A stretch of DNA of 17,869 bases from the IMG/VR virus record IMGVR_UViG_3300005977_000075, positions 1 to 17,869 of that record. The stretch is one strand, 5' to 3'. The position numbers were made by a program, and so were the translations under genes. Position 1 is the first letter of the stretch. The number at the start of each line of letters is the position of its first letter. Below the pieces are notes generated by a model. That model had not been told where the DNA came from. It did not search any database and saw only the letters and a program-made list of their open reading frames with translations. This document shows positions 2,514 through 17,174 of the stretch, piece by piece.

Positions 2514-3548
2514 CTAGTAGGACATCATGAAGTTTCTGAGTATAAATTCGTAAATGTTGTAGGACTTGAGTTTTTGATCCAAGACGGAACGGAAGTCATC
2601 GTCGATCTTGTAGTTAATTCGTGCGTTAAGCAGTGACATAGTGACGTTGAGCATCAGATCGAACAGTACGTTTCTCCAAAATCTATCCTCAATCCTGTAT
2701 TCTTGGGACAGGACTTCGGCGATGTTACTCAGTCTCGATCTGCTCAATTGTCTCTCGGCGTCTAAACCCTTGACGTAACTCTGAAGGGCTCTAAACGTTT
2801 TTGTCAAGTCACTCACTGTTGATGATTTAAATCCCCGTGTTCCCGGTTCGAGGAAAAGTTGTCTCGTTACGTCAATCATGCCGGTATATCCTATCTTGTT
2901 CCCTGTCATGGAAATGTTGAAGGACATTATCAGGGGGAAATATAACGTGTAAAAGTGATGATTCCCTTTTTTCTTACTTTGCGGGTTTAACAGGTTCTCG
3001 AGCTCTTTCATCATACGTTGGTATGTGGACGTCATTTTGGTCTCCAACACTTCCTTCAAAGACTTAACTGGAGCGTTTACGGTGTCAGCGGTGGTCTTGG
3101 AAAGCATCAACATCTTGTACACGTGCGACAATGTGTCTGTGGAGACCGTTAAGTCTTCCCCCAACGGGACTCTTGTAGTGAGGTCTGACCCTATGGTGAC
3201 ACTCTGTAGGAATTTAATTAGTCCCAGTTCAGTCAGTAGAGAGGCTATGTAGTACTGGTTCAGATCCCCGGTGTCTATCTTAAGTTCGTCCTTGAGCTCC
3301 TCTGCCCTCCTAAACACTCTATCTAACTTGTCCTTGAGCCCGTTAACGTGCCCAATCTTGCCGTAGTCCACAGGGAGAAGGAACCCCTCCCTTAACCACC
3401 GGGCAAAGGTAGCAGATTCATCCCTGGAGATCTTGTTGCTTGACCTTGACTCTATAAGGGGGAGTACATCGTTAACCACGTAATTTATGAGTAACCTGTC
3501 TGGGTCTGTTGTTGGTGATTTGAACGTTTGAATATTCATGATCATCAA
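2514..3548 (-). CDS. Hypothetical protein, about 344 aa, unknown function
   Basis: Long ORF with natural composition. Upstream AT-rich TATA-like tract plus both palindromic motifs; downstream pyrimidine-rich tract on the coding strand. No family recognised. Confidence 0.85.
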   Translation of the reverse strand: MMIMNIQTFKSPTTDPDRLLINYVVNDVLPLIESRSSNKISRDESATFARWLREGFLLPVDYGKIGHVNGLKDKLDRVFRRAEELKDELKIDTGDLNQYYIASLLTELGLIKFLQSVTIGSDLTTRVPLGEDLTVSTDTLSHVYKMLMLSKTTADTVNAPVKSLKEVLETKMTSTYQRMMKELENLLNPQSKKKGNHHFYTLYFPLIMSFNISMTGNKIGYTGMIDVTRQLFLEPGTRGFKSSTVSDLTKTFRALQSYVKGLDAERQLSRSRLSNIAEVLSQEYRIEDRFWRNVLFDLMLNVTMSLLNARINYKIDDDFRSVLDQKLKSYNIYEFILRNFMMSY

Positions 3549-3769
3549 TCTATGTGTTGCCTGGCTGATATTTTAACTTAACACATATGTTTTATGATCT
3601 GCCTAACAAGTTAGGGAAGTTTAGGGTGAAACTGAGGTGGGTGAAGAAAGTGGGGGGTGAGGGGTGAAGTGAAGAAGAGAGGGGCGAAGAAAGAACAAAT
3701 GTAAGAATACATATGTTTTACGATAAAGTAAAGGCAAGAATGGGACGAATAATATAAAAACTAGAAAGT

Positions 3770-3842
3770 GGTAGAATATGGGGAGAAAGATGGGGAGAAA
3801 GCGGGTAGAATATGGGGAGAAAGATGGGGAGAAAGCGGGTAG
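3770..3842 (+). repeat. 34-bp direct repeat x2 (GGTAGAATATGGGGAGAAAGATGGGGAGAAAGCG) containing ATGGGGAGAAAG x4
   Basis: Read directly: 3770-3803 is identical to 3804-3837, followed by a partial GGTAG. Confidence 0.95.
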
Positions 3843-4964: not shown

Positions 4965-5055
4965 TAGCATACCCCGCTCGTCGTGGTGGCGTCATTCCTG
5001 CCTAACTTGCTAGGCAGAAGATTTAAATACCAGTCCCCACAAGAGTATAGTTGTG
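4965..5055 (+). promoter_or_regulatory. Duplicated promoter: CCTAAC-NN-GCTAGG palindrome, BRE (AGAAGA), TATA TTTAAATA
   Basis: Closely similar copy at 5851-5929; the same architecture occurs on the minus strand at about 13973-14007. Confidence 0.8.
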
Positions 5056-5681: not shown

Positions 5682-5850
5682 AAGTCAGCCCATTTTTTAT
5701 GTTTTTCACCATAAAACAGCTGTTTTAGGTTAGGGTTGGCTGGTGGGTTCATCCACCCCCTCCACCCCAGTTTGTCCCTACACTCACTTTCATTTTGCAC
5801 TTTCATTTTGCAAGACTTTTGAAGTGAGAACTTCTTCACTCATCCGTGTT

Positions 5851-5929
5851 TTAGCATCCCCGTCGTGGTTCTGCCTAACTTGCTACGTAGAAGATTTAAA
5901 TACCACTCCCCACCAAGAGTATAAGTGTG
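5851..5929 (+). promoter_or_regulatory. Second copy of the duplicated promoter (CCTAACTTGCTA...AGAAGATTTAAATACCA)
   Basis: Aligns with 4965-5055. Confidence 0.8.
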
Positions 5930-5936
5930 GAGTAAG

Positions 5937-6065
5937 ATGTTATCATTAGATAGAATGAAATTGTGGTACTATTACGCTAATAAAGAAGTGAAGTTTACCG
6001 ATATAGAGAAAAAGCTATTATCTGAACTAGGTATTAAATACCAGTCCCACGGTGGTTATGCTTAA
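5937..6065 (+). CDS. Small hypothetical protein, 42 aa (MLSLDRMKLWYYYANKEVKFTDIEKKLLSELGIKYQSHGGYA)
   Basis: First ATG after the duplicated promoter, with GGAG upstream. Its TAA overlaps the next ATG (TAATG). Confidence 0.6.
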   Translation: MLSLDRMKLWYYYANKEVKFTDIEKKLLSELGIKYQSHGGYA

Positions 6066-6472
6066 TGATGATTAGGTGCTTTAAGATTAAATCTTCTTCT
6101 TCTAATGAAATATTTACTAGCCTCAATATTAAAGCTAATGAAATAGTTTGCATAGGCGACTCTCAATGGCTTATTAATCTTACCAGAAGAAAGGCGTTCA
6201 TTTTACTACCGGAAGAAATGGACAACCTGCTGAAACTTCATCTTCCTAACGAATTCAAAGTCGAAGTAGTGTCACGCCATCGCTACGAGCCAAGGAAACA
6301 CTACACTATTTACAGTATTTATAAAGTGTCACCTGGCAAGCGTCGGCGTCGGTATTTCATAGAAGTTTATGATGGATCGAGTACTGCATATACCTATCAT
6401 TTCTGTGAGTCGCGTGTTAAGTGTATGGCTCTTGAAAAAGATCTTGAAGAGGACAATATAATGCTTTATTAA
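6065..6472 (+). CDS. Hypothetical protein, 135 aa
   Basis: ORF coupled to the upstream small ORF, GGTGG SD-like upstream. No family recognised. Confidence 0.7.
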   Translation: MMIRCFKIKSSSSNEIFTSLNIKANEIVCIGDSQWLINLTRRKAFILLPEEMDNLLKLHLPNEFKVEVVSRHRYEPRKHYTIYSIYKVSPGKRRRRYFIEVYDGSSTAYTYHFCESRVKCMALEKDLEEDNIMLY

Positions 6473-6571
6473 TATTACTAAAGCGAACGACAATACTCGC
6501 CACTCGCCCTTCTAGGTATTTTGTTGGTCAATGTTGTCGATGTCGATTATCTCTTATCTCTTATCTTTTTC

Positions 6572-6600
6572 CACCTGAGACCCCGTCCATAAGTGCGGGG
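6572..6600 (+). mobile_element. Degenerate IS200/IS605-like right-end hairpin remnant
   Basis: CACCTGAGACCCCGTCC...GCGGGG shares 17 identical nt with the reverse complement of 16275-16311. Confidence 0.5.
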
Positions 6601-6665
6601 AGCTAAGTATAAATATGAATTTTGAAAAACGATTCGTTTTACCAAGTTCATGGTAAATCGTTTAG

Positions 6666-6785
6666 TAAATAGTTTAATATTGTTTCGCAAATATCGTTGT
6701 CTATATCTTTTACGTCAGTGAGAGATCCTCTAAATAGTTTAATATCGTTTCGCAAATATCATTGTCTATATATTTTTCGTCAGTG
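6666..6785 (-). repeat. 55-bp imperfect direct repeat (6666-6720 and 6731-6785, 4 mismatches) duplicating the 3' end of ORF 6710-7081
   Basis: Read directly; period 65 bp. Confidence 0.92.
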
Positions 6786-7081
6786 GCAGACCCCCAATGT
6801 CCTCGTAATTTGCACACTCCTCTACTATATACTAAATCTATGTTAGGGCCTCCAAAAGTTATACCAATGTCGAAGCCTACTAGTTCTCTACTTGGTAAAG
6901 AGGTGTAAAGTATTATGTCGATGGCGTCGTCTATAACCTCTTGTAACTTGTCCTGCTGGAATTTGTCCTTAAGTTCCTTTGCTATAAAGTCCAAATTTTT
7001 TTCTAATGCTGTACGGTTATCTGCAGAATTTATCAAAATATCTAACATGTCCTCTTTATTTTGACCAAATTCCTGCGACAT
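6710..7081 (-). CDS. Acidic hypothetical protein, 123 aa, with a FGGPNI...GHWG motif
   Basis: Leaderless-type gene: CTTAAATA TATA about 22 nt upstream, preceded by AAACAGCTGTTT. Function unknown. Confidence 0.8.
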   Translation of the reverse strand: MSQEFGQNKEDMLDILINSADNRTALEKNLDFIAKELKDKFQQDKLQEVIDDAIDIILYTSLPSRELVGFDIGITFGGPNIDLVYSRGVCKLRGHWGSATDEKYIDNDICETILNYLEDLSLT

Positions 7082-7155
7082 AAGAAAATGTTTTCACAGC
7101 AGTATTTAAGCATTTCGTAAACAGCTGTTTGAGGTGGTATTTCCTTGGCGAACCC

Positions 7156-7332
7156 CTACTGCTTCTCCCGTTTGTCGATGAGGACTTTTCCGTGGATTTT
7201 TAACACTCCGGTTCTGTCATACTCTGCTAACGCATCAAGGTATTCTCTATAGGTCTCGATAATATAATCTACCCTGTTATGCATTCTCTCCAGGATCTTT
7301 TTCTGCTCGTCGGTTAATTTATGCGTTACCAT
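7156..7332 (-). CDS. Small protein, 58 aa (MVTHKLTDEQKKILERMHNRVDYIIETYREYLDALAEYDRTGVLKIHGKVLIDKREKQ); possible stand-alone Phd/Doc-type antitoxin mimic
   Basis: Manual translation (below the ORF-track cut-off), with its own TATA-like TTATAAATA upstream. The amphipathic helix IIETYREYLDALAE resembles Doc-neutralising helices. Function is inferred. Confidence 0.6.
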   Translation of the reverse strand: MVTHKLTDEQKKILERMHNRVDYIIETYREYLDALAEYDRTGVLKIHGKVLIDKREKQ

Positions 7333-7377
7333 CTGATTCCCTATTAAATATTACACCTAATACTATTTATAACATCT

Positions 7378-7929
7378 TTACATTTCGCTCCACATCCCGG
7401 TTGCCATAAGGACGTATATTACGCTCATCACTTCTCCGAACGATGCTATGAAATCGATAATTAACGAGAGGTCATGGACAAACAGCTGTATTGGCGGAGC
7501 GATGAACGGCAACGATATGTTGGACGTCATAGGTAGCAGTATAGCGGTGAAAAACACTAAAATGCTTTCAAAACTATTGAAAATGAATTGAAGTAGTAAA
7601 TAAATGAAGATTATTTGCATAGTACTCATATTTTGCTGTGACAAGTTCAGGAGATAATTCCTTGTAAATAGTGCAGAAATAGTAGCTAGTCCTGCTATTG
7701 CTCCTCCTGCTATTATGCCGGCACCTTGAAAAACACTCCCTAGAACATGTTCTAGGAACAATACTAGGTTGAACGACAACAATAACGATATGTAATTTCC
7801 AAGTGCGGGGTCTGTTGAATACTCATTGAAATTAATCAAGGTTACCAGCAGATCGACGAGAAAAGTCGAATATATTATACCTTCGTTGATCCTGTAAAAG
7901 ACAGTTGCGAGTGAACCTATCAGTCCCAT
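7378..7929 (-). CDS. Multi-pass membrane protein, 183 aa
   Basis: Several long hydrophobic segments. Leaderless-type gene with TTTTTAAT about 22 nt upstream, overlapped by AAACATATGTTT. Confidence 0.85.
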   Translation of the reverse strand: MGLIGSLATVFYRINEGIIYSTFLVDLLVTLINFNEYSTDPALGNYISLLLSFNLVLFLEHVLGSVFQGAGIIAGGAIAGLATISALFTRNYLLNLSQQNMSTMQIIFIYLLLQFIFNSFESILVFFTAILLPMTSNISLPFIAPPIQLFVHDLSLIIDFIASFGEVMSVIYVLMATGMWSEM

Positions 7930-8000
7930 GAGATGATTTTAGTTCTTAGATTAAAAAAACATATGTTTTAGCTCTAAGGTTCTTCTCAGCACCTTCTCTT

Positions 8001-8032
8001 AGGCTAACAATTATGAAGGCTAACAATTATGA
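8001..8032 (+). repeat. 16-bp tandem duplication AGGCTAACAATTATGA x2 overlapping the stop of 8027-8653
   Basis: Read directly. Confidence 0.9.
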
Positions 8033-8653
8033 GTAATCAGCGTGGATCTTGAAAAAAAGGTAATAACCTAAGGAGTCCTTTGAGGGTATAGGTGTTCTAT
8101 CGGCAACTAATGCGTGTAATAATGCTCCGCTTAGCTCAGATATATAAGGGAATACTTCTTTTTTCTTTATATATATCCGTATAGGCATCCCGAAAAATCC
8201 TACTAGGAAATTAGCGATGTTGAATATATCTTTAATCCTAGAATCTTTTGTTGTTTTTATGTTAGTCTTATGTAGTTTTAAGTACACTGTTGTTACGAAG
8301 CGTAAATACAACGAATAATAAGCGGTTATTAGGAAATTAGGGTTATCAGAATTTAATACCTCTTTGTAGAACTCCTCTTCATTTGTCTTCAACCCGTCAA
8401 TAAGTTTTTGTAACCCGTTCATTACCATATTAACGTATTCTTCTATAGTCCCGTTACTGTCAAACATAAATCCAAAATCCTCCTTTATTTTTTCAGCTTC
8501 TTTTGACAGCATTTTTAACTTGTCCTTGTCTTCATTTAGGGCTAACATTAGCATATCCTCATGCTCACGTTTGGCTAAATAATCCCACATCTCCAAGCGG
8601 ACAGGGAAATATTCTTCTAAAAGGCGAGAAAGGTTAGCTAACATAATTACCAA
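8027..8653 (-). CDS. Hypothetical alpha-helical protein, about 205 aa
   Basis: Long ORF; AAAAG-TTAAATAT BRE/TATA upstream on the minus strand. Confidence 0.8.
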   Translation of the reverse strand: MVIMLANLSRLLEEYFPVRLEMWDYLAKREHEDMLMLALNEDKDKLKMLSKEAEKIKEDFGFMFDSNGTIEEYVNMVMNGLQKLIDGLKTNEEEFYKEVLNSDNPNFLITAYYSLYLRFVTTVYLKLHKTNIKTTKDSRIKDIFNIANFLVGFFGMPIRIYIKKKEVFPYISELSGALLHALVADRTPIPSKDSLGYYLFFKIHADYS

Positions 8654-8755
8654 TCTAATTTAGTTAGAAGGTTAGTATATTTAACTTTTGATCGGTTGCC
8701 GTGGAAGGGCGTTGAGGAGGTCAGCAATTTAAAGCGAACATGGTAAGTTATAGAC

Positions 8756-9274
8756 ATGAAGCGAGGGTACAGGAAAAAAATCAAGAGGGTAAAGACACAC
8801 AACCACGCCATACACATATATGCATTTCCATGGGAGTGTTACAAAGTCAGGGAAATAAGCGATGATGTTTATGAATTGTTCCAAGCAGATTGCAACGACC
8901 CAGAAGCTAAAAGAAAAGCGGAGACTTCAGTGACAATAAACGTGAAAAAGAGGGGTATATACAACATTTTGTTATTTCCAGAGAAGATAGTTTTCAAATT
9001 AGCGAAAGAAGAACATAGATACACTGTAACTAATTTACTATTTTTCCCCAGAAAAGTATACGATCTGCAATTCGATGACGAGAACCTTATTTTAAAATAT
9101 GTATATCCTTCTGGGAAAAAAGTAGGCACTGTGAAAATCAAGTTAATGAAACCCGTTGTATTTGAGAGAGATAAAAAAGACCACTACAGTATAATGAAGT
9201 TCGGGAAACCTGACGATTACCAGATTTTGAAAAAAGAAATTCTGGAAAAGGTGGAAGTTGTCGCTAGTAAATGA
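8756..9274 (+). CDS. Basic hypothetical protein, 172 aa
   Basis: TTTAAAG TATA about 22 nt upstream (leaderless); overlaps the ATPase gene, suggesting an operon. Confidence 0.8.
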   Translation: MKRGYRKKIKRVKTHNHAIHIYAFPWECYKVREISDDVYELFQADCNDPEAKRKAETSVTINVKKRGIYNILLFPEKIVFKLAKEEHRYTVTNLLFFPRKVYDLQFDDENLILKYVYPSGKKVGTVKIKLMKPVVFERDKKDHYSIMKFGKPDDYQILKKEILEKVEVVASK

Positions 9275-10181
9275 TTATATAAAATTAAATGATACCGACC
9301 CAGAAAAGGCACTCTTGAGAGTAGATTACAATACACTGTTACCTATGTTCGAAAAATACTACACACAGGTGTATGATGCTAATGTGAAGTTCATCGATTT
9401 CCCCTACATGGAGAAACAGTACATTGAATTATCTAGAAAATATTACATGGAAGGTATTGCCGATTTAACGGTTCTCATGATGCATACAATATACCAGATC
9501 ACGATAGACAGAAAGGAACACAAGTTCGAAAAAATAAGACCTGTCCCGATTGACACCGGTCAGACGACGATCGTTAGCGGGGAGTCCAGGGGAGGGAAAT
9601 CCTCATTGGCGTTGTGGCTTGCGTACGCGTTATATGGCGATTGGGACGTCGCTATCGCACACATTATCATCGATCCGTTGCAACTCGACGACCTAATTGA
9701 GGGAATGAAAACATACGGGATAAACAAGATCCCGATGATAATTATTGATGATGCCGGTATAGGTTTCGGAAAACAGGTAGGGAAGATGGACAGACTTAGA
9801 CTAGAAAAGATACATAAATATGCACAGACATGGGCAATAAAGTTCAGTAACGTGTTGATGACTATACCGTCGGAAACTAGGCTTTCTGGTGTATTGATGA
9901 AAGCCATGCCATCGTCGTATGCTATTACAATAAAACCATTGACAATGATGACGTCTGAGGCTCACGTATACAAGAACGTTGTCAACATCACAGGAAAGTT
10001 ACTGAAGACTAAACATACACTTAGGGATTACAACAGTGTTAACGTTGGGCTTATCTTAAAGAACGAGCTAAAAAACAAGTATTCGCATATAGTGTATACA
10101 CCAAGGCTAATGCCAGACGAAGCTTACGTGAAATATAAGCAACTCAGAGAAGACTATCTATACATTATCGCGAAGATGTGA
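9258..10181 (+). CDS. P-loop ATPase (possible viral packaging/morphogenesis ATPase)
   Basis: Walker A TIVSGESRGGKS and Walker B MIIIDDAG; GGTGGA SD before the TTG start. The specific role is inferred. Confidence 0.88.
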   Translation: MSLVNDYIKLNDTDPEKALLRVDYNTLLPMFEKYYTQVYDANVKFIDFPYMEKQYIELSRKYYMEGIADLTVLMMHTIYQITIDRKEHKFEKIRPVPIDTGQTTIVSGESRGGKSSLALWLAYALYGDWDVAIAHIIIDPLQLDDLIEGMKTYGINKIPMIIIDDAGIGFGKQVGKMDRLRLEKIHKYAQTWAIKFSNVLMTIPSETRLSGVLMKAMPSSYAITIKPLTMMTSEAHVYKNVVNITGKLLKTKHTLRDYNSVNVGLILKNELKNKYSHIVYTPRLMPDEAYVKYKQLREDYLYIIAKM

Positions 10182-11147
10182 ACCTTTTTTTACAGAGGGG
10201 ATTGAGGAGGAACTCAACCTACTTATTATTTCTCTTCTTCTCAGCGGGAACTCTGTAGCAATTGCAGTTAGGATGCCGTAAACTATTCCAGTTACCCCAA
10301 AAAGTTCCTGGAAGAGCAAAGTCCACAGATAAACCCCGTAACTCACCTCGCCTAAGAAGACCGTTACACGACTAAGTACCCTGGGTGGCTCCACGATAAG
10401 GAGGGCGAAAGCGGGTAACGCCAAATTGTAAATCAAGAACCTTGTGAAGAACTCATATACAAATTCATTAGAGGAAAATACAAATGTAATAAGAACATAT
10501 TGAGCGTAAAGTATTAGTATGAAATATTTGGCTTTTTTGGCTGGTTCACCTTTCTGTTTCTTCTTCAAAAGGTAAGCAATTATTCCCCACCCGTATGCCC
10601 CTAACCACAAGGGTGGCATGAAGTAAAGTAAGTGGAACTCGTCGTAAGGAAGGAAGACGATAAAGAGACTGTAGAAGAACGATATAAATACCAATAAAAC
10701 AGCTGTTTGAAACTTTGCTTTATCGCTCACTCCATGAATGACGGGGATAGCTAAGTACATCCATTCCTCCAGCTGGAGAGACCAGAAGAGATATTGAAAG
10801 GAAAACGGTGCAAAAACGAAGGAAACAAACGCAAAATGGAGTATCAAGTCGTAATACGTCACGCCCATATGGAACACGTATCTGTCGGCTAAGAATACAG
10901 TGACTACGGCAAGGAAGTAGAGTGGCCATATCCTCCTCACCCTTCTCGTGAAGTAACGAGCTAGTGAGGGGTTTTCGTCGAGTCTGTTCAGAAGGAGAAA
11001 AATCGATAGCTCGAAAAATAGGGGAACACCCAACCAACCAGGACGGAAAAATGTGAGAGGGACTAGTTGAAGAGTCCACAGATGATATAAAGCTACAGAA
11101 AAAGCAGAGAAAAAACGTAGCTGGGCTATTCTAGGGTCATACTCCAT
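10158..11147 (-). CDS. Acyltransferase family 3 (OafA/YrhL-like membrane O-acyltransferase)
   Basis: RIAQLRFFSAFSVALYH, GWLGVPLFFELS, YFTRRVRRIWPLY, FWSLQLEEWMY and FLGEVSYGVYLW match the AT3 motif series; about 10 TM segments. Confidence 0.92.
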   Translation of the reverse strand: MEYDPRIAQLRFFSAFSVALYHLWTLQLVPLTFFRPGWLGVPLFFELSIFLLLNRLDENPSLARYFTRRVRRIWPLYFLAVVTVFLADRYVFHMGVTYYDLILHFAFVSFVFAPFSFQYLFWSLQLEEWMYLAIPVIHGVSDKAKFQTAVLLVFISFFYSLFIVFLPYDEFHLLYFMPPLWLGAYGWGIIAYLLKKKQKGEPAKKAKYFILILYAQYVLITFVFSSNEFVYEFFTRFLIYNLALPAFALLIVEPPRVLSRVTVFLGEVSYGVYLWTLLFQELFGVTGIVYGILTAIATEFPLRRREIISRLSSSSIPSVKKGSHLRDNV

Positions 11148-11878
11148 TTTAGTCGCCTGGCATATATCATGCCGATCTTCTTGTTTCCTTTAATTGTAAC
11201 GTTAAACCCTGATGCTCTAAGCAGATCTGCAAGATGTTGAACGCCGTTATGATATTCTATGATAATTGTGTGATATCTACTAATCAAACGTGGTGGAACA
11301 GCACCAAAGAAATCGTATTCACACCCTTCACAATCGACTTTAAGTACAGACTCATAAGGAATATTATATTTCAGCGTTATAATATCTAAATTATTCGAAA
11401 GTCCACACTCACAACGAATCGGCTCAACGACGTCTTTTACATTGTTTTCCCTTATGTTCTTCTCTAAGTACCACACATTAACGTCAAACGCATAGACTTT
11501 CTTTGCACCGTTCAAGACAAAATAAATTGGCGAATCGCCTATCCCCGCACCGACATCAACTACTGTCCTTCCTTTTACATCAACATCATATGCACCGTCT
11601 CTGAAAATTTCCCCGAGAGCCACGAAACTATTTGTATCGAAATAGAACTTTAGTATCCTGTCCCTGTATCTAACTTGTATAAATCTATCATCAACATAAA
11701 TTACGTCAAGATCGCGTAACGTTGTAAAGAAATAAGCGTGCCATTTCGACTTTATTTCTACTTCCAACCCGTTCCTTAAGTTAGCTGTGAAAGGGAACTT
11801 GTTTAATGCTGTCTTAAACATGACATTTAACGGATTATGATATGCGGACATATACGCCTTAAACGTTTTGAAATCCAT
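11126..11878 (-). CDS. FkbM-family SAM-dependent methyltransferase
   Basis: VVDVGAGIGDS (motif I), KVYAFD, LKVDCEGCEY, IIIEYH. Confidence 0.92.
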   Translation of the reverse strand: MDFKTFKAYMSAYHNPLNVMFKTALNKFPFTANLRNGLEVEIKSKWHAYFFTTLRDLDVIYVDDRFIQVRYRDRILKFYFDTNSFVALGEIFRDGAYDVDVKGRTVVDVGAGIGDSPIYFVLNGAKKVYAFDVNVWYLEKNIRENNVKDVVEPIRCECGLSNNLDIITLKYNIPYESVLKVDCEGCEYDFFGAVPPRLISRYHTIIIEYHNGVQHLADLLRASGFNVTIKGNKKIGMIYARRLKWSMTLE

Positions 11879-11945
11879 GGTCTTTATCTTGTGCGTGTTG
11901 TAATTAAAAATGTGAAAAACAACTGTTTAATATCTTCATTCATTA

Positions 11946-13946
11946 TCACCATGTCCCAGTGACAGGGAAAGAGTCGGACTTCAACATTTTCTCCCTTATT
12001 ATTGTCATTTTCACCCTTATTTCGGTCAGTGATTCTATAATGTCATTTGCTAATTCGTCCTCAGTTTTTTGCATTAATTCTTCATAGTTAAAGCTACGGC
12101 AGTACCCAATGCCGTCTGGCAGGGTATATTGTGGACATTCATATTCTTCATAATCCTCATCACCTTCGCGATGAGACAAGTTATTTTTATTCTGTAGTAA
12201 CTTGTTGTACAGTACTACAGCTTTCTGGAATAATTCTGACACTGCCCCCCTCACATCGTCACCAATCGAACTATAATCTCTCTCGTACTCCACAATTGCT
12301 TCATCGTAACCCCTAATGAAGTACAACATGTTCTTTACCACACTTATATCATCATCATCTGAATAACGCCCAGATAACCCAGCATACTCTAAGAAAATCG
12401 GTACAGGCATATGACCCTCATTTGTACTGATTAAGGAATGGTATGATGATAACCTTTGCTGTTTATCCAGTTCTAATGCCACATTACAATGCTTATCGAA
12501 TATACAGTTAATCTCAGCAATATCCTTAATCGGCGATGTAAAATCTGGGACTTTGTCCCTCACATAACCAATCGTCTTATCGATAACTTTGATGGTAGTA
12601 TCAACAAACTTCTCAACGTATTGTTTGACCTGATTGAACGGCATTGGATAGAAGTACCTTTCCTCAATTTGCCTGTTAATTATATCTGCAACTTTCTCTT
12701 TACTGAGGTTTTTGAGTCCATTAAAGTCCCTCACGTCAAAATACCACAAATAAGTCCTTAGAGATGTTAAGAGCTTATTTTCTTCATAAACACCGATGTG
12801 AATTTCGTCTTCGTGTCCTTTTATTACTATATATTTGTAGCCTTTTATTACTATATATTTGTAGCCGTTGTCTATTTCAAAGCTATCAGCACTTTGTGTG
12901 ACATTAACTCCTAATAATAATTGCAAATATTTTTGGACGTTTTTGGACGGAACTATATGGTAGTAATCTCCACCACAACTATCAAATATATAATAATCTC
13001 TAGGCTCGTAAAACAGGAGACTTTCTTTCTTTGGATTTATATCATGTATTGTCTGCATTGGGTCAATATTTAGTATATTTAGTATTCTAGCGACTTTTAG
13101 CAGATAGTCATAATGCACTTTAATGAACCAAAAGTCGTTTTTGTGGAGCTCAATACTGACAGGGACATTAAGCCTTGACATTTTCTCAATTATAGGAAGT
13201 ATATCAGCTCCCCAGTTCTCATCCTTTAGTTCTAGTACTATATTATTCAGGGATACTTCGGTACCATCAGTTGTTATTTTGTTAAACCTTTCAATTACCG
13301 GCATTAACTTATCAATTACCGGCATTAACTTATTCAATATCTTCTTCAGGTTTTCCTTCCCTTTGCCTTCTAACCCTAGCTCCTCACCATAAGCTTTTAT
13401 GGCAAATTCGGGTTTTGATAAAGACAATTTATCTAAGACGTCTCTGACGTCCTGGTCTATGAAATCTCTAATTTTTTTGTATATTTCCCAATTCTTTATA
13501 CTTAAAATGATGAATTTCTTTGTTTCTTTGTCGTATAAAAGAGAAATTTTGCCTATGATATCTATTAAAATCATGTCGTTTTTAATAGTAGAAAGGGCTA
13601 TCTCATCATTATCAGTAGTTAAGTTAAGGTTAATTAGTTCCTCTGGCAACGGTTCTAGCTTAAAGACACAGAAAAAACCTAGTTCTGAAAACTTTAGTTT
13701 ATCAATGTTTATATTAAATAGTTGAGATAAATTTGACAAAACCTGGTCAGCCTTTGAAAAATAGGGTGTCCTGATGTATACGTCGCCACTAGAGTCTACA
13801 ATGAGAGTAAACTCTTTACCCCGAGAGAAACAACTGTAGTAGTAACCGTTAAGACCACATACTTCGTTATTATATTCTTCACGACACTCTACTCCTATAC
13901 TTTCTATACTTTCTATAATTTTTTTTACTCTTTCTACCATTTCCAT
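11946..13946 (-). CDS. Large hypothetical protein, 666 aa, with two in-frame tandem duplications
   Basis: Long ORF with GYKYIVIK x2 (12817-12864) and KLMPVI(D/E) x2 (13291-13332). Its promoter has the same type as that of 5053. No family recognised. Confidence 0.88.
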   Translation of the reverse strand: MEMVERVKKIIESIESIGVECREEYNNEVCGLNGYYYSCFSRGKEFTLIVDSSGDVYIRTPYFSKADQVLSNLSQLFNINIDKLKFSELGFFCVFKLEPLPEELINLNLTTDNDEIALSTIKNDMILIDIIGKISLLYDKETKKFIILSIKNWEIYKKIRDFIDQDVRDVLDKLSLSKPEFAIKAYGEELGLEGKGKENLKKILNKLMPVIDKLMPVIERFNKITTDGTEVSLNNIVLELKDENWGADILPIIEKMSRLNVPVSIELHKNDFWFIKVHYDYLLKVARILNILNIDPMQTIHDINPKKESLLFYEPRDYYIFDSCGGDYYHIVPSKNVQKYLQLLLGVNVTQSADSFEIDNGYKYIVIKGYKYIVIKGHEDEIHIGVYEENKLLTSLRTYLWYFDVRDFNGLKNLSKEKVADIINRQIEERYFYPMPFNQVKQYVEKFVDTTIKVIDKTIGYVRDKVPDFTSPIKDIAEINCIFDKHCNVALELDKQQRLSSYHSLISTNEGHMPVPIFLEYAGLSGRYSDDDDISVVKNMLYFIRGYDEAIVEYERDYSSIGDDVRGAVSELFQKAVVLYNKLLQNKNNLSHREGDEDYEEYECPQYTLPDGIGYCRSFNYEELMQKTEDELANDIIESLTEIRVKMTIIREKMLKSDSFPVTGTW

Positions 13947-14058
13947 TCCTGGTCAAACATATGTATGCCAAAACTGGTATTTAAACCTTTTTGCCTAACC
14001 AGTTAGACAAAAAGTAGGGTGATGGAAAAACAGCTGTTGGAGCTATTTTCTCTTTCGT

Positions 14059-14101
14059 CCCACCTCAAGGAGGGAGACGTCTGCCCCCTCAACCCCTGCC
14101 C
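14059..14101 (-). mobile_element. Degenerate IS200/IS605-like left-end remnant abutting the TATA box of the RHH gene
   Basis: CCCACCTCAAGGAGGGAGACGTCTGCCCCCTCAACCCC aligns with CCCACCTCACGGAGGAGGACTTACGCCCCCTTAACCCC in the 14457-14557 element; followed by TATTTAAA. Confidence 0.55.
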
Positions 14102-14132
14102 TATTTAAAAATAATCTGGCAAGAACATAATC

Positions 14133-14450
14133 ATGGGAAAAAGAATCGTCTCGTTTAGAATAGAACGTAGTGCACTTGAATTGATTGATTCTAAGAACAA
14201 GAATAGATCTTCAGTGATGAGAGACGCTATAAACTACATTATCCGGGAAGGTATAACAAAGGACGATATACTAATAGCCCTATCCATCCCGATAGACGAG
14301 AAGAGGCAAACAAGTGTTAAAATCGATGAAGAGACGTTAGACAGGCTAAAACTAATTGCGGAAGAGAACCATATACAAGTAAGTGAACTCATGAGAATCG
14401 CAATATGGAAACTCCTCCTGAAAGACGGAGCAGTTAGTGTGCCCCAGTGA
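14133..14450 (+). CDS. Tandem ribbon-helix-helix (CopG-like) transcription regulator
   Basis: Two RHH units: RIVSFRIERSALELID...NRSSVMRDAINY and RQTSVKIDEETLDRLKLIAEENHIQVSELMRIAIWKLL. Leaderless, TATA at 14102-14109. Confidence 0.88.
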   Translation: MGKRIVSFRIERSALELIDSKNKNRSSVMRDAINYIIREGITKDDILIALSIPIDEKRQTSVKIDEETLDRLKLIAEENHIQVSELMRIAIWKLLLKDGAVSVPQ

Positions 14451-14456
14451 ACTTTT

Positions 14457-14557
14457 GTGAACTACCCCGCCCTAATGGGGCTTCCTGCTTCAAAGGTGGC
14501 TATCCATCCCCCACCTCACGGAGGAGGACTTACGCCCCCTTAACCCCCCAGAAACTA
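14457..14557 (-). mobile_element. Miniature non-autonomous IS200/IS605-like element (left end plus right end, about 100 bp, no ORF)
   Basis: On the minus strand: TTTAA, then GGGGTTAAGGGGGCGTAAG...GGGGATGGATAGCC (left-end-like), then GAAGCAGGAAGCCCCATTAGGGCGGGGTAGTTCAC (right-end hairpin ending TCAC). Near-identical copy at 17036-17146. Confidence 0.7.
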
Positions 14558-14595
14558 TTTAAACACTGCTCAAACATATGTTTAAGTGACACCAG

Positions 14596-14814
14596 TTGAA
14601 CCCGTTTGCAGTATTCTTTATCGCAGTTTTTGTCCTAATACCGTTTTTATTGCTTATCGTAGTTTTGGCAAACAACTTTACCGGATTATTTTATAGCATA
14701 GATGGGAGTTCATTTACACCAGTGGCAAATACTGTAAACTACATGTTGTGGGCATTCGTAGTTTTGGCAATAGCTTTGGTTGCAGTCCTGATAATATACA
14801 AGAAATATACGTGA
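14596..14814 (+). CDS. Small two-helix membrane protein, 72 aa; possible minor capsid protein
   Basis: Two hydrophobic helices, an N-F-T sequon in the linker and a basic C-terminus (IIYKKYT), as in spindle-virus capsid proteins. Confidence 0.65.
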   Translation: MNPFAVFFIAVFVLIPFLLLIVVLANNFTGLFYSIDGSSFTPVANTVNYMLWAFVVLAIALVAVLIIYKKYT

Positions 14815-14849
14815 ACTGACCGTCCTAAGGGAACCCTCGCCCTTTACGG
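14811..14849 (+). mobile_element. Truncated tnpB 3'-end/right-end-like fragment
   Basis: GTGAAC...CGTCCTAAGGGAACCCTCGCCCTTT resembles the Sulfolobales orfB/tnpB terminus (coding RPKGTLAL, from memory); the second hairpin arm is missing. Confidence 0.45.
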
Positions 14850-14922
14850 TAGACCCAAAATCACCTCCTTGAAATTAAAAGAGGAAAATAATTAATAAAT
14901 AATTCTAGATTTTAAAAAAAGT

Positions 14923-15564
14923 TTAACTTTTATTTGTTAAAGCTTCTAAATCAGGCAACGTATGTTCTATATCGTATAATACGCTGTCTATCTCATCTAG
15001 TAAAATGCTTAATACCTCTAATTTATTACTGTCGTCCAGTTCATCATAAAAGCCCTCCCAATAACCTATTTCCTCATAATAGCCATAATTTTTCACTCCG
15101 AAGACGGTATCGCCTATCTTTTTGTACCAATAATCCAAATCATCACCACTTAATGGCTTCTTGTTTTGTAATGCACGCTTGATTGCATCAGCGAATTTAA
15201 CTAATACCTCGTCGTAAGCTTGTAGACGTCTAGCTTTACTGGCGTCATCAAGCTCATCGTTTTGCACTATATTTTGATATAACATCTGTAATTCATCGCC
15301 GAGAGAACCACCGGCTTTTAGGCTCATCGTTTCCTTCCACAAACTCTCATATTCCTTTTTCACCTCGTCCCAGAAGTTGTCTGAATTTTCAATCGCTTTG
15401 TCGAGATCTTCAGCTTCATTCTCATCAAGGTATGCATCTACAAAAACGTCCAATTGGTCTGGGTTGTGGTCTGTCAAGCACCCGAGTGGTGTGTCGCCAC
15501 TAATATTTTCACAATAATTGGCTACTCTGTCCATCACGAGTTGAGCTACATCACGTGGTTCCAT
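14923..15564 (-). CDS. Highly acidic hypothetical protein, 213 aa
   Basis: About 50 D/E versus about 20 K/R by hand count. Own promoter (AAACAGCTGTTT-GAGAAAG-CTTATATT) and T-rich downstream tract. Confidence 0.88.
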   Translation of the reverse strand: MEPRDVAQLVMDRVANYCENISGDTPLGCLTDHNPDQLDVFVDAYLDENEAEDLDKAIENSDNFWDEVKKEYESLWKETMSLKAGGSLGDELQMLYQNIVQNDELDDASKARRLQAYDEVLVKFADAIKRALQNKKPLSGDDLDYWYKKIGDTVFGVKNYGYYEEIGYWEGFYDELDDSNKLEVLSILLDEIDSVLYDIEHTLPDLEALTNKS

Positions 15565-15638
15565 TTTTATTCCCGATACAAAATTCCTGAGTCGGGAATA
15601 TAAGGCTTTCTCAAACAGCTGTTTTATTTATTTAGGTA

Positions 15639-15733
15639 CGGACTTCCTCCCCTCACTGGTAGGGCGAGGGAAGGCTAAGCATTTCCTATGCTTCTCCGGA
15701 GGGTGAGGTTTTCCATCCCCCTTAACCCCCAAC
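15639..15733 (-). mobile_element. Miniature IS200/IS605-like element of a second subtype (degenerate)
   Basis: Minus strand: TTTATAAA, then GGGGGTTAAGGGGGATGGAAAACC (left-end-like), then CCCTCGCCCTACCAGTGAGGGGAGGAAGTCCG (right-end-like; compare GGGGAGGAAGTCAG). Confidence 0.5.
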
Positions 15734-15813
15734 TTTATAAACTTTCCGTTTCAAATCAATCGAAGTGCGGGGTTTTTAAGTATTTCCTGTGTACTCTAAT
15801 ATTAGGACTGGTC

Positions 15814-16278
15814 ATGACAATTGAGGACAGAATTTATCGTTTAATTAAACTTTTGCTTTACACTGCAAAAGAGGAGAATGCAAAAGTCACTCCGACCAAA
15901 CTGCAGAAGATTTTCTTTTTACTTGAGAAAGAGAAGGGAATTAATCTAGGACTGGATTTTGAGCCTTGGTTCTTCGGTGCTTACTCGTCGAAATTACAAG
16001 ATTACGTCCATAAACTAATCGCAATAGGAGACGTCGACGTTGTAAAGGAGAAAAAAGTAAGAGATCCATTGAGCGGAGCAATAATAGGGTACGTAAGGAA
16101 TCATGTTTTAAACAGCGAATTTAAGCCTGAGGAACAAGACAAGGAGATTGAGGCATTTTTCAGGGAATGGGTCAAGAAGAGCAAAGACGAGATCATGAAC
16201 TACGCGTATCGGAAATACCCTGAATACTTTGAATATTCTAAGATTAGAGATCACATTTTTAGCAAGTTGAAAAGGTAA
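15814..16278 (+). CDS. SocA/Panacea (DUF4065)-like antitoxin, 154 aa (start revised to ATG 15814)
   Basis: VTPTKLQKIFFLLE...FEPWFFGAYS and YAYRKYPE match the KLQKLLY...F-x-W-x-x-GP pattern. The longer start at 15688 lies inside the mini-element. TTTTTAAG TATA at about 15773. Confidence 0.75.
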   Translation: MTIEDRIYRLIKLLLYTAKEENAKVTPTKLQKIFFLLEKEKGINLGLDFEPWFFGAYSSKLQDYVHKLIAIGDVDVVKEKKVRDPLSGAIIGYVRNHVLNSEFKPEEQDKEIEAFFREWVKKSKDEIMNYAYRKYPEYFEYSKIRDHIFSKLKR

Positions 16279-16311
16279 ACTACCCCGCCCTCACGGACGG
16301 GGTCTCAGGTG
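16275..16311 (-). mobile_element. IS200/IS605-like right-end hairpin overlapping the stop codon of the SocA-like gene
   Basis: Minus strand: CACCTGAGACCCCGTCCGTGAGGGCGGGGTAGTTTAC, with hairpin CCCCGTCC/GGGCGGGG; the same end as the 14457 and 17036 copies. Confidence 0.65.
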
Positions 16312-16513
16312 TCAAAAGATGAAGTCGACTTTTGTTAACTTTCTCTTTTTCCGTTTTACGTTATTTCTGCCTAACTGGTTGGGCTGAAACTGTCCCTATT
16401 CACTTCTCTCTTGTTTTTCTCCCATTTTTCTCCCAGTTGTTTTTCTCCCAGACCAGGAATAGTGAAGCGAAAAGCTTATTAATACCTCAAACAGATGTTT
16501 TACACGAAGCAAA

Positions 16514-16984
16514 ATGTCAGTTTCGGTAATCGTTCCGTCCGCAAAAGCAACAGGAGCAGGTGGTAAGAAAGCAAAAATGTTCAAGGTAATTAACGTTCAT
16601 ACACCAAATGCAAATAGTGTTCATATACCAAAAATAAAGAAAGCGACTAGAATTCATGATCCAGGAGTAGCAGGGTCGTTAGTCAGAGTAACGTTTGGAA
16701 CCAACGGGTTTGACATTCCAACAATAGCAATAGCCCTCTTGATAGTCGGTGTAATAATAGGACTATCAGGTTTAATTCTCTCTATCTTCGCCACAGCTAC
16801 TGCCTCAGCAATAAGCAATCCGTCACCAGGAACATTAGCGTATAACTTGACGCACCCGCTGGTAAACGGTATGGTATCGTTCTTCAGCTTCTTCCCAACG
16901 CTATACGTATTGCTCGGTGTGACCGGAATAGTACTCATCGCGGCAGGTATAATATCCATAATAATGGAGAAATTCAAGACTTAA
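16514..16984 (+). CDS. Probable major capsid protein of a spindle-shaped virus (basic N-terminal region plus two long hydrophobic helices)
   Basis: Basic N-terminus of about 65 aa, helix 1 DIPTIAIALLIVGVIIGLSGLILSIF, linker with an N-L-T sequon, helix 2 FFPTLYVLLGVTGIVLIAAGIISII, then a basic tail. This is the architecture of fusellovirus VP1 and bicaudavirus capsid proteins. Strong BRE-TATA (GAAAAG-CTTATTAA) and T-rich terminator. Confidence 0.75.
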   Translation: MSVSVIVPSAKATGAGGKKAKMFKVINVHTPNANSVHIPKIKKATRIHDPGVAGSLVRVTFGTNGFDIPTIAIALLIVGVIIGLSGLILSIFATATASAISNPSPGTLAYNLTHPLVNGMVSFFSFFPTLYVLLGVTGIVLIAAGIISIIMEKFKT

Positions 16985-17035
16985 AACTCGAAGTCAAACA
17001 TGTGTTTTTTTCCGCGAATTCACTTTCTTCTTCTT

Positions 17036-17146
17036 GTGAACTACCCCGCCCTAATGGGGCTTCCTGCTTCAAAGGTGGCTATCTTCAAGGGGGCTATCCA
17101 TCCCCCACCTCACGGATGGAGTCTTACGCCCCCTTAACCCCTTTCT
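17036..17146 (-). mobile_element. Miniature non-autonomous IS200/IS605-like element, second copy
   Basis: Near-identical to 14457-14548 plus a 15-bp internal insertion (TTCAAGGGGGCTATC); abuts the TTTTAAAA TATA of the next gene. Confidence 0.7.
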
Positions 17147-17174
17147 TTTAAAACTCTTCTGTTAAGATATTAAC

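What the first reader, a model, noticed from the sequence alone, without database searches (positions are those of the whole stretch)
14059..17146. Array of miniature IS200/IS605-like ends punctuating single-gene cassettes
Seen: every intergenic gap from 14.0 to 17.2 kb holds an end-like element: 14059 (left end), 14457 (left+right), 14811 (right fragment), 15639 (left+right), 16275 (right) and 17036 (left+right). Further remnants lie at 6572 and about 8706-8724. Five of the six point the same way (minus). No tnpA or tnpB is in the window. Established: TnpA(Y1) recognises subterminal hairpins, works in trans, and can move DNA lying between a left end and a right end. Inference: a left end of one element and the right end of the next enclose one or two genes (for example 17146 to 16275 encloses the capsid gene; 15733 to 14457 encloses the acidic and small membrane genes). 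This would be an integron-like cassette architecture that host TnpA, or recombination between the near-identical copies, could shuffle.
Basis: partly seen in the sequence, partly recalled or inferred. Interest (0 to 1): 0.75.

Follow-up and report, generated by a model that had tools for sequence, protein, structure and literature searches.

The report
Decayed IS200/IS605 transposon ends between viral genes
The short GC-rich hairpin elements between the genes of this Sulfolobales virus contig are shrunken, gene-less derivatives of a known transposon type (IS200/IS605, ISC1733/SMN1-like) that inserted one at a time next to promoters and stop codons; they are not boundaries of movable gene cassettes.

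Summary
[quoted passage not shown] Only 14811 stays unproven. That transposon is about 1.72 kb, encodes TnpA (Y1) and TnpB, and lies in Metallosphaera yellowstonensis; SMV3 also carries a copy.

Every element in 14.0-17.2 kb that can be oriented lies on the minus strand. The window has no tnpA or tnpB.

The two near-identical 101/112-nt copies are fused LE+RE elements (PATEs, palindrome-associated transposable elements). They are related to a ~320-bp SMN1-like MITE. 16275 is a 44-nt single-hairpin "terminal-only" element that occurs in 64 distinct metagenome contexts.

Close relatives have exact empty sites for three of the elements, so the elements themselves are the mobile units. They insert 3' of TTAA(C/A) or TTCAT without an evident target duplication, as IS200/IS605 elements do.

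The "integron-like cassette" inference is not supported. Gene order (RHH, membrane, capsid-like, next gene) is the same in relatives that lack the ends. The one variable gene has indel breakpoints that do not coincide with LE/RE boundaries.

Some deletions do abut end remnants, so the elements probably generate local rearrangements. Overall this is a new member of a known kind, of moderate to low interest.

The parts
14059..14097 (-). Solo LE fragment (LE profile positions 10-48, including the LE hairpin TCCCTCC-TTGA-GGTGGGA). It lies directly upstream of the TATA-like box of the RHH gene.
   Evidence: nhmmer LE profile, E 3.7e-6. 39 nt are 82% identical to the LE half of the 17036 copy. Also present in L051; absent in L045. 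SMV1 has an SMN2 MITE at this spot instead.
14457..14557 (-). Mini-PATE 1 (101 nt): LE (about 14504-14557) fused to the last ~47 nt of an RE (14457-14503). It fills the gap between the RHH stop codon/T-run and the TATA box of the 72-aa membrane gene.
   Evidence: LE E 9e-20 and RE E 1e-9. The LE half is 53/57 identical to the M. yellowstonensis IS LE; the RE half is 38/43 identical to a M. yellowstonensis MITE RE. The site is empty in L051, L045 and SMV3.
14811..14867 (-). Unproven RE-like remnant. It starts with GTGAAC, whose TGA is the stop codon of the membrane gene, followed by a weak GC-rich hairpin. It replaces most of a 95/130-aa gene that SMV3 and L045 retain.
   Evidence: No profile hit; fold z -0.67. 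Homology with L045, SMV1 and SMV3 breaks exactly at the GTGAAC.
15641..15670 (-). HgcC-type RE-hairpin remnant (CCCTCGCCCT-ACCA-GTGAGGGGAGGAAGTC), upstream of the acidic gene's promoter. Its outer portion is shared with SMV3, so it is older than the adjacent LE piece.
   Evidence: 26/30 match to the HgcC-like element in L044; 0 of 300 shuffles reach that score. The alignment with SMV3 covers the outer part of the remnant.
15673..15733 (-). LE fragment: GGGGGTTAAGGGGG joined directly to ATGGAAAACC, so the LE hairpin has been deleted, plus about 35 nt of further sequence. It lies next to the TATA-like box CTTTATAAAC.
   Evidence: nhmmer LE E 0.004; motif match with 2 mismatches. Identical in L051 and L011; absent in SMV3 and L045.
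16275..16318 (-). Complete 44-nt terminal-only (single-hairpin) PATE: CTTTTGACACCTGAGA-CCCCGTCC-GTGA-GGGCGGGG-TAGTTTAC. It is inserted 3' of TTCAT (16319-16323, minus strand) inside the end of the 154-aa gene. Its GTAAAC supplies the new stop codon (TAA, 16276-16278).
   Evidence: RE profile E 8e-12; hairpin -9.4 kcal/mol, z -2.7. The site is empty in L045. A different variant occupies the same site in L243. The family has 64 distinct contexts, and flanks diverge just outside TTCAT and TTTAC.
17036..17147 (-). Mini-PATE 2 (106-112 nt; the outer LE boundary is ambiguous by 6 nt). Same structure as mini-PATE 1 plus a 15-nt tandem duplication at the LE/RE junction. It lies between the capsid-like gene and the TATA box of the next gene.
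   Evidence: LE E 3e-22 and RE E 4e-10. Identical in L050. L011 has no element at this site (a 120-nt duplication of the capsid-like gene's 3' end lies just upstream), and L045 has a 45-nt terminal-only element in the opposite orientation there.
6565..6608 (+). Degenerate single-hairpin remnant (CTTTTTCCACCTGAGA-CCCCGTCC-ATAA-GTGCGGGG-AGCTAAGT) whose RE terminus has decayed. It marks the left edge of a 528-nt segment (6563-7090) that L051 lacks. It is homologous in position to an LE in L251.
   Evidence: Inverted match to 16283-16320 (38 nt, 87%). RE profile E 0.003. L051 comparison; L251 comparison.
8707..8724 (+). HgcC-type RE terminus remnant (GGGCGTTGAGGAGGTCAG), just upstream of the TATA-like box and the ATG at 8756.
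   Evidence: 16/18 match; 0 of 200 shuffles give any match.
5770..5790 (+). Start of an SMN2-like element (GTTTGTCCCTACAC...), a different IS200/IS605-related MITE family that is annotated in SMV1. At this spot L051 carries an RE terminus (GGGCTGGGTAGTTTAC) instead.
   Evidence: 15-nt exact match to the SMV1 MITE-SMN2 end; sequences read.

Best explanation
The intergenic GC-rich elements are non-autonomous, internally deleted derivatives of an ISC1733-like IS200/IS605 insertion sequence. They come in three size classes below the 1.72-kb IS: a ~320-bp SMN1-like MITE (found in relatives only), 101/112-nt fused LE+RE mini-PATEs, and a 44-46-nt terminal-only element with one hairpin.

Shown: the ends match those of an IS that encodes a Y1 TnpA and a TnpB. 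Each end has the expected subterminal imperfect 8-bp hairpin. There are no terminal inverted repeats. The elements are present or absent at exact sites among near-identical relatives. They lie 3' of a short target (TTAAC/TTAAA for the LE-bearing forms, TTCAT for the terminal-only form) without an evident target duplication.

Inferred: they were moved one at a time by TnpA supplied in trans, through single-strand 'peel-and-paste' transposition. Candidate sources are the host (for example Metallosphaera or other Sulfolobales) or a co-resident virus or plasmid; SMV3 carries the full IS and L011 a tnpB-only copy. Because the target resembles TTTAAA, the elements pile up beside archaeal TATA boxes and stop codons, where insertion is tolerated.

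The mini and terminal-only forms have lost the omega-RNA scaffold and the tnpA promoter, so they are passive passengers. Their side effects are replaced stop codons, rebuilt TATA boxes, and deletions that start at an end.
For: Identity of the ends.
- The RE motif is the 3' end of tnpB ORFs (Pfam OrfB_IS605 plus Cas12f1-like_TNB) in many archaea and bacteria.
- A full IS with Y1_Tnp (E 4e-41) and TnpB, with matching LE and RE, lies in M. yellowstonensis (L134) and in SMV3 (L010).
- ~320-bp MITE copies occur in L044, L034, L045, ATSV, pHVE14 and pARN4.
- Profile hits in the window and the shuffle controls.
- Hairpins fold as expected.

Mobility.
- Empty sites for 14457-14557 (L051, L045, SMV3), for 17036-17147 (L011) and for 16275-16318 (L045).
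- The canonical IS in L011 sits after TTTAAC, and L045 has an empty site there.
- 64 independent contexts of the terminal-only element share TTCAT|...TTTAC| boundaries.

Literature.
- SMN1 (320 bp) is mobilised by ISC1733 (PMC3718332).
- The RE-like tetraloop, HgcC and PATEs are described in PMC4615843.
- 52-bp terminal-only PATEs arise by repeat-mediated deletion and appear mobile in Haloquadratum (PMC3119063).
Against: - Both mini-PATEs carry a crippled RE hairpin: 4 nt of the 5' arm are missing. Their outer LE junctions are non-canonical and differ from each other. TnpA-mediated movement of exactly these copies is therefore not certain; gene conversion or recombination could have copied them.
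- No transposase is in the window, and the host is unknown.
- 14811 cannot be shown to belong to the family.
- The name SMN1 could not be verified against a reference sequence.
Confidence: 0.85

Rival explanations
1. An LE of one element and the RE of the next act as the ends of composite units, so single genes (capsid-like; acidic plus membrane) behave as TnpA-mobilisable cassettes in an integron-like array.
For: - Geometry allows it. All LEs and REs in 14.0-17.2 kb are on one strand, so LE...gene...RE units exist on paper.
- The acidic gene family occurs at two different loci, each time with an LE about 50-110 nt upstream in the same orientation: the window at 15 kb, and L251 at the window's 6.5-kb locus.
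- The L176 homologue has an LE/RE-like mini element at its 3' end.
- A 528-nt gene-bearing indel against L051 starts exactly at an end remnant.
Against: - The capsid-like, membrane, RHH and 154-aa genes are in the same order in L045, SMV1 and SMV3 without the flanking ends.
- Three empty sites show that the elements alone are the inserted units.
- Acidic-gene indel breakpoints against L045 are near 14922 and 15797, not at 14811/15733.
- In SMV3 the acidic gene is at the same slot with only an old RE remnant and no LE.
- L251 has no RE after the gene.
- Each gene has its own TATA box, unlike integron cassettes.
- No case was found of one LE-gene-RE unit with an empty site.
Confidence: 0.07
2. 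The hairpins have been domesticated by the virus as cis-acting signals, for example 3'-end or terminator hairpins, mRNA stabilisers or insulators between tandem genes. This would be analogous to bacterial REP elements.
For: - They sit immediately after stop codons and before the next TATA box.
- One supplies a stop codon (16276-16278), and the 14811 GTGAAC supplies another.
- RE-like tetraloop RNAs were reported to affect growth in Halobacterium (PMC4615843).
Against: - Presence or absence and type vary among relatives that are 95-99% identical, so the elements are dispensable.
- On the sense mRNA of the upstream genes the hairpin is the complement and carries a C-A mismatch.
- Archaeal termination uses T-runs, which already exist in the empty sites.
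Confidence: 0.1
3. The dispersed ends act mainly as breakpoints for deletions and for recombination between co-infecting viruses and plasmids. On this view they shape the mosaic genome without being cassette boundaries. This does not exclude the best explanation.
For: - Window 14811-14867 replaces most of a gene kept in SMV3 and L045.
- SMV1 has a different deletion of the same gene, abutting an HgcC-type RE end.
- The window 6563-7090 indel starts at an end remnant.
- The same intergenic slots carry different elements in different relatives.
- Homology with SMV1 stops at 14810.
Against: There are few events and no statistical test. Intergenic regions are where both indels and insertions are tolerated, so co-occurrence is expected anyway.
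Confidence: 0.3

Closest known systems
SMN1 / ISC1733 (Sulfolobus non-autonomous element and its IS200/IS605 partner)
   Same: A ~320-bp gene-less element without inverted repeats, found in Sulfolobales plasmids and viruses. Its ends match a ~1.72-kb IS that encodes TnpA and TnpB. The window's mini elements share the LE at 93% and the RE terminus.
   Different: The window holds only 101/112-nt and 44-nt derivatives and solo fragments, not the 320-bp form. Identity with the published SMN1 sequence could not be checked here; it is inferred from size, host range and the literature statement in PMC3718332.
PATEs (palindrome-associated transposable elements), including the 52-bp terminal-only versions of Haloquadratum walsbyi
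   Same: LE and RE of IS605-type elements are fused. There are no inverted repeats and no target duplication, and a 4-6-nt targeting sequence is used. Core deletion between the two near-terminal palindromes leaves a single-hairpin element that still shows strain-specific insertions.
   Different: Different phylum and a different IS subfamily. Here the elements are in a virus genome, with TTCAT and TTAA(C/A) targets.
TnpB omega-RNA 3' hairpin (RE-like tetraloop; Rfam HgcC RF00062 and sot0042 RF02656)
   Same: An 8-bp GC stem with a tetraloop, followed by a short conserved tail at the very end of the IS. The SMV1, L044 and SMV3 copies give sub-threshold HgcC or sot0042 hits.
   Different: The window copies keep only the terminal hairpin, and in the mini-PATEs a truncated one. 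The ~150-200-nt scaffold is gone and no Rfam hit was found in the window, so they cannot be functional guide RNAs.
Bacterial REP/REPIN elements with RAYT transposases
   Same: Short intergenic hairpins with a conserved flanking tetranucleotide, derived from or served by a Y1 HUH enzyme, and concentrated after genes.
   Different: No RAYT-type gene was examined. The sequences here descend directly from IS605 ends, and copy numbers are far lower.
Integron gene cassettes (attC / IntI)
   Same: Only the picture of a repeated structured element after each gene.
   Different: There is no integrase or attI. The genes have their own promoters, the elements are polymorphic while gene order is fixed, and the recombination chemistry is different.

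Membership tests
IS200/IS605-derived non-autonomous element (PATE/MITE) | Ends homologous to the LE and RE of an autonomous IS encoding a Y1 (HUH) TnpA | tested here: met
   The L134 IS encodes Y1_Tnp (E 4e-41) and TnpB. The window LE half is 53/57 identical. Profile E-values reach 3e-22 for LE and 8e-12 for RE.
IS200/IS605-derived non-autonomous element (PATE/MITE) | No terminal inverted repeats; different LE and RE, each with a subterminal imperfect hairpin | tested here: met
   The LE hairpin is CCCCCTCC-GTGA-GGTGGGGG and the RE hairpin is CCCCGTCC-GTGA-GGGCGGGG in the IS. The window copies keep the LE hairpin. The RE hairpin is intact in 16275 and truncated in the two mini-PATEs.
IS200/IS605-derived non-autonomous element (PATE/MITE) | Insertion 3' of a specific 4-5-nt target, without target-site duplication | tested here: met
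   The terminal-only element follows TTCAT in nearly all of 64 contexts, with exact empty sites. The canonical IS follows TTAAC, with an empty site in L045. The mini-PATEs follow TTTAA(A), but their boundaries are ambiguous by 1-6 nt.
IS200/IS605-derived non-autonomous element (PATE/MITE) | No transposase of its own | tested here: met
   The elements are 44-112 nt long. tblastn with TnpA and TnpB against the window gives E > 0.9.
IS200/IS605-derived non-autonomous element (PATE/MITE) | Mobilised in trans by TnpA through a single-stranded intermediate | not testable with these tools
   There is only indirect evidence: presence/absence polymorphism and independent hits at one site.
   The genes stay in place in relatives that lack the ends. 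The acidic-gene indel breakpoints do not coincide with LE or RE. L251 has an LE upstream of a paralogue but no RE.
Integron | Adjacent tyrosine-recombinase integrase with attI and a common promoter; promoter-less cassettes each ending in attC | tested here: not met
   Pfam finds no integrase among the ORFs scanned. Each gene has its own TATA-like box. One gene is on the opposite strand.
Functional TnpB omega-RNA (HgcC / sotRNA) | A full scaffold of about 150-250 nt ending in the RE hairpin, scoring above the Rfam threshold | tested here: not met
   No HgcC or sot hit in the window at E up to 10. Only 47-55 nt of the RE is retained.
SMN1 (named Sulfolobus element) | Sequence identity to the published SMN1 | not tested
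   No reference sequence was available; the Berkner and Lipps 2007 paper is not held. The ~320-327-bp relatives in pHVE14, pARN4 and ATSV fit the published size and dependence on ISC1733 (PMC3718332).

The most novel reading that the evidence does not exclude
LE-bearing remnants can carry an adjacent gene with them by one-ended or cryptic-end TnpA events. The acidic 213-aa gene family sits at two different loci in related viruses, each time with an LE just upstream in the same orientation. The gene-bearing 528-nt segment 6563-7090 begins at an LE-type hairpin and ends at a TTCAC pentamer.
Probability: 0.1. Interest if true: 0.6.

Novelty: new member of a known kind. Interest (0 to 1): 0.3.

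Why it matters
The finding shows that small spindle-virus-like genomes from acidic hot springs are heavily colonised by shrunken IS200/IS605 derivatives. Insertion is specific enough (TTAA(C/A), TTCAT) that the same intergenic slots are hit repeatedly in different lineages.

For annotation, GC-rich hairpins after stop codons in Sulfolobales viruses should be read as transposon relics. They are not terminators, att sites or cassette boundaries. Some ORF ends and start-codon calls are artefacts of these insertions; for example, the 196-aa ORF call at 15688 runs through an element.

For biology, the window offers natural filled/empty pairs for testing how small an IS200/IS605 substrate can be: a single hairpin, or a 4-bp RE stem. 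It also links virus genome plasticity to host TnpA activity. It does not reveal a new recombination system.

Tried and rejected
1. SMV1's annotated MITE-SMN2 as the source. It is unrelated in sequence apart from an adjacent RE-like hairpin and a 15-nt end match at 5770.
2. Rfam on the window. There are no meaningful hits; the Clostridiales-2 match at E 0.1-0.57 is chance.
3. The plasmid collection with the whole window. No match.
4. The mini-PATE junction pattern in viral contigs. It occurs only in this lineage, so there is no independent evidence that the 101-nt form is a dispersed family.
5. 14811 as an RE. Profile and fold tests are negative; only the exact homology break at GTGAAC argues for it.
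6. A covariation test of the RE hairpin across the 120 genome loci. Not run, because the search pattern fixed one arm of the stem, so the result would be uninformative.
7. The SMN1 primary paper could not be read, and one literature search was swamped by the human SMN1 gene.
8. The 'capsid' label for 16514-16984. Only PHROG families of unknown function match, so the label is unverified.
9. Relating the orientation bias to replication direction through GC skew. Abandoned, because the contig is incomplete: it ends inside a gene.

Full report
**What the window is.**
The 17,869-nt window is the whole contig IMGVR_UViG_3300005977_000075. About 7.2-14.8 kb is 83-92% identical to the bicaudavirus SMV1, and it is also related to SMV3 and SMV4. 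The remainder is shared with uncultured hot-spring viral contigs:
- L051, 95-97% identical over 7091-15767;
- L011 and L050, 95-99% identical over the right end;
- L045, 82-91% identical.

The contig ends inside a gene (17175 onwards), so it is not a complete genome. Pfam and PHROGs give an RHH protein (14133-14450), a DnaA-like ATPase, an acyltransferase and a methyltransferase. The rest are families of unknown function.

Yes.
- Two copies, 14455-14547 and 17034-17141, are near-identical.
- Short diagnostic motifs are far above chance.
- Profile HMMs built from related LE and RE sequences hit 14059-14097, 14457-14554, 15673-15733, 16275-16326 and 17036-17143, all on the minus strand. They also hit 6576-6600 on the plus strand.
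- 8707-8724 matches a second RE type at 16/18 nt.
- The inner end of the 15639 element matches that same type at 26/30 nt.
- Only 14811 fails every statistical test.
- The window has no tnpA or tnpB.

**What the sequences are.**
The pattern GTRAACTACCCCGCCCTNANGG occurs in more than 120 genome contigs from many archaeal phyla and some bacteria. In many of them a 400-440-aa ORF ends exactly in the motif on the opposite strand. Eight such ORFs tested are TnpB proteins: OrfB_IS605 plus the Cas12f1-like TNB domain. The motif is therefore the reverse complement of the RE terminus of IS605/IS1341-type elements, an 8-bp stem with a tetraloop followed by TAGTTCAC. This is the 'RE-like tetraloop' already described for sotRNAs, HgcC RNAs and PATEs (PMC4615843). 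Sub-threshold Rfam hits to HgcC and sot0042 in SMV1, L044 and SMV3 agree with this.

In Metallosphaera yellowstonensis MK1 (L134) I found a 1.72-kb element with two features. It encodes a Y1 TnpA (Pfam E 4e-41) and a TnpB. Its first 100 nt and last 62 nt match the two ends of a 318-327-bp gene-less element. That shorter element is present in L044 (two copies), L034, L045, Acidianus tailed spindle virus, pHVE14 and pARN4. SMV3 carries the full IS. L011, a near-identical relative of the window, carries a copy with tnpA deleted and tnpB intact. Size, hosts and IS partner fit the published SMN1/ISC1733 pair (PMC3718332), but I could not check the name against a reference sequence.

**Anatomy in the window, read on the minus strand, LE to RE.**
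- *Mini-PATE 1 (14557-14457) and mini-PATE 2 (17147-17036).* Each is about 55-60 nt of LE, including the LE hairpin, fused to about 47 nt of RE. The LE half is 93% identical to the M. yellowstonensis IS. The RE half is 88% identical to a M. yellowstonensis MITE (L106). Both copies lack 4 nt of the 5' arm of the RE hairpin. Copy 2 has a 15-nt tandem duplication at the junction.
- *16318-16275.* This is a complete 44-nt element with a single perfect hairpin. It has an LE-type left part of 16 nt and the RE tail TAGTTTAC.
- *14097-14059.* A solo LE fragment.
- *15733-15641.* Two juxtaposed remnants. One is a hairpin-less LE found only in the window lineage. The other is an older HgcC-type RE hairpin whose outer portion is shared with SMV3.
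- *6565-6608 (plus strand).* A decayed single-hairpin remnant.
- *8707-8724 (plus strand).* An HgcC-type RE tail.
- *5770-5790.* The start of an SMN2-like element. L051 has an RE tail at that spot instead.

**Evidence that the elements themselves move.**
- Mini-PATE 1 is absent at an otherwise collinear site in L051, L045 and SMV3. The flanks TTTAAA and AAAAGTTCAC are contiguous there.
- L011 has no element at the mini-PATE 2 site, although a 120-nt duplication of the capsid-like gene's 3' end lies just upstream there. L045 carries a 45-nt single-hairpin element in the opposite orientation at the same slot.
- The 16275 element is absent in L045. Another contig (L243) has a different variant at exactly the same TTCAT.
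- A metagenome scan found the single-hairpin element in 64 distinct contexts. Flanks diverge immediately outside TTCAT on the left and TTTAC on the right.
- The canonical IS in L011 sits after TTTAAC, which contains the stop codon of the upstream gene. L045 has the empty site there.

These features are the defining behaviour of IS200/IS605 elements and their PATE derivatives: a specific short target on the LE side, no duplication and no inverted repeats. That includes the 52-bp terminal-only PATEs of Haloquadratum, which arise by deletion between the two palindromes and still appear mobile (PMC3119063).

**Why they sit where they do.**
The targets TTAAC, TTAAA and TTCAT are found in archaeal TATA boxes (TTTAAA) and around stop and start codons. 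The elements therefore fill the space between a stop codon and the next TATA box. Their consequences can be read directly in the sequence:
- The insertion at 16275 displaced the original TGA of the 154-aa gene. The ORF now ends at a TAA inside GTAAAC.
- The GTGAAC at 14811 provides the stop codon of the membrane gene.
- Mini-PATE 1 rebuilds the TATA box of the membrane gene.
- The 196-aa ORF call at 15688 runs through an element. The real start is the ATG at 15814, as in L045.

**The cassette inference.**
The order RHH, membrane gene, (variable slot), 154-aa gene, capsid-like gene, next gene is conserved in L045. It is partly conserved in SMV1 and SMV3, whether or not the ends are present. The supposed units '17146 to 16275' and '15733 to 14457' therefore enclose genes that are native to their positions.

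The only variable gene in the region is the acidic 213-aa gene. It occupies the same slot in SMV3. Its absence in L045 has breakpoints near 14922 and 15797, which are not the LE or RE boundaries.

Some rearrangements do abut end remnants:
- 14811-14867 replaces most of a 95/130-aa gene that SMV3 and L045 keep.
- SMV1 has an independent deletion of the same gene next to an HgcC-type RE tail.
- The 528-nt segment 6563-7090, missing in L051, starts at a remnant.
- A 72%-identical paralogue of the acidic gene lies at the 6.5-kb locus in L251, again with an LE just upstream.

I read these as IS-end-associated deletions, together with the general crowding of insertions in promoters. I keep a 10% possibility that an LE occasionally carries a neighbouring gene along.

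**Open points.**
- It is unclear how the two mini-PATEs spread with a 4-bp RE stem and non-canonical LE junctions.
- It is unclear whether 14811 belongs to the family.
- The host and the source of TnpA are unknown.

**Verdict.**
The integron-like cassette architecture is not supported. The elements are new members of a known kind (PATEs/MITEs of the ISC1733/SMN1 type, including terminal-only forms), here in a Sulfolobales virus contig.

Noticed in passing
window 711, 1915, 2386, 4941, 5714, 7119, 7957, 10697, 11917, 14572, 15613, 16489, 16996: The palindrome AAACA-NN-TGTTT occurs 13 times against 0.06 expected (mostly AAACAGCTGTTT or AAACATATGTTT). Nearly all copies lie just downstream of TATA-like boxes. 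The motif is conserved at the same places in L045, L011, L176, SMV1 and SMV3. It is probably the operator or initiator site of a virus-encoded regulator, and the RHH protein is a candidate.
   Followed up: partly
window 3600, 4999, 5872, 13992, 16368: A second palindromic motif, TGCCTAAC-NN-GTTAGG, occurs 4-5 times against 0.01 expected. Each copy lies upstream of a TTTAAATA-type box, and two copies lie in 43-nt repeats (4998-5040 and 5871-5913).
   Followed up: partly
L177-L249 (metagenome contigs); window 16275-16318; L045 4901-4945; L033; L020: A 44-46-nt single-hairpin element, TTCAT|CTTTT.ACACC.GAGA-CCCCGTCC-GTRA-GGGCGGGG-TAGTTTAC|, is dispersed in hot-spring metagenomes in 64 distinct contexts. 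Some contigs are 55-140 kb and look cellular. One site exists in three states: empty, variant A and variant B.
   Followed up: partly
L011 2256-3670: A near-identical relative of the window carries a 1.4-kb ISC1733-like copy with tnpA deleted and tnpB intact (413 aa). It is inserted right after the stop codon of the gene that runs off the window's right end, which may be why assemblies break there.
   Followed up: partly
L251 (IMGVR_UViG_3300005964_000043) 2881-3644 versus window 6049-6708 and 14909-15733: A 72%-identical paralogue of the acidic 213-aa gene, with an LE upstream, occupies the window's 6.5-kb locus in L251. The window keeps only the LE-like hairpin there. SMV3 has three places matching this gene family.
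   Followed up: partly
window 6666-6793 and 3770-3837: There is a 63-nt tandem duplication (89% identical) overlapping the 3' end of ORF 6710-7081, and a perfect 34-nt tandem repeat at 3770-3837 built from GATGGGGAGAAAG units. The motif TTTTTCTCCCA is repeated three times at 16414-16450, upstream of the capsid-like gene.
   Followed up: no
Genome-contig loci L052-L171: The 22-nt RE terminus (hairpin arm plus TAGTTYAC) is conserved nearly unchanged at the ends of tnpB genes. It is seen in Methanoculleus, Thermococci, Hadesarchaea, Marsarchaeota, Asgard lineages, haloarchaea, and some cyanobacterial and actinobacterial MAGs.
   Followed up: partly
L001 (SMV1) 8482-8757: The annotated MITE-SMN2 of SMV1 probably extends about 25 nt beyond its annotated end, because an RE-type hairpin (profile E 5e-5) lies immediately outside the annotated boundary.
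   Followed up: no
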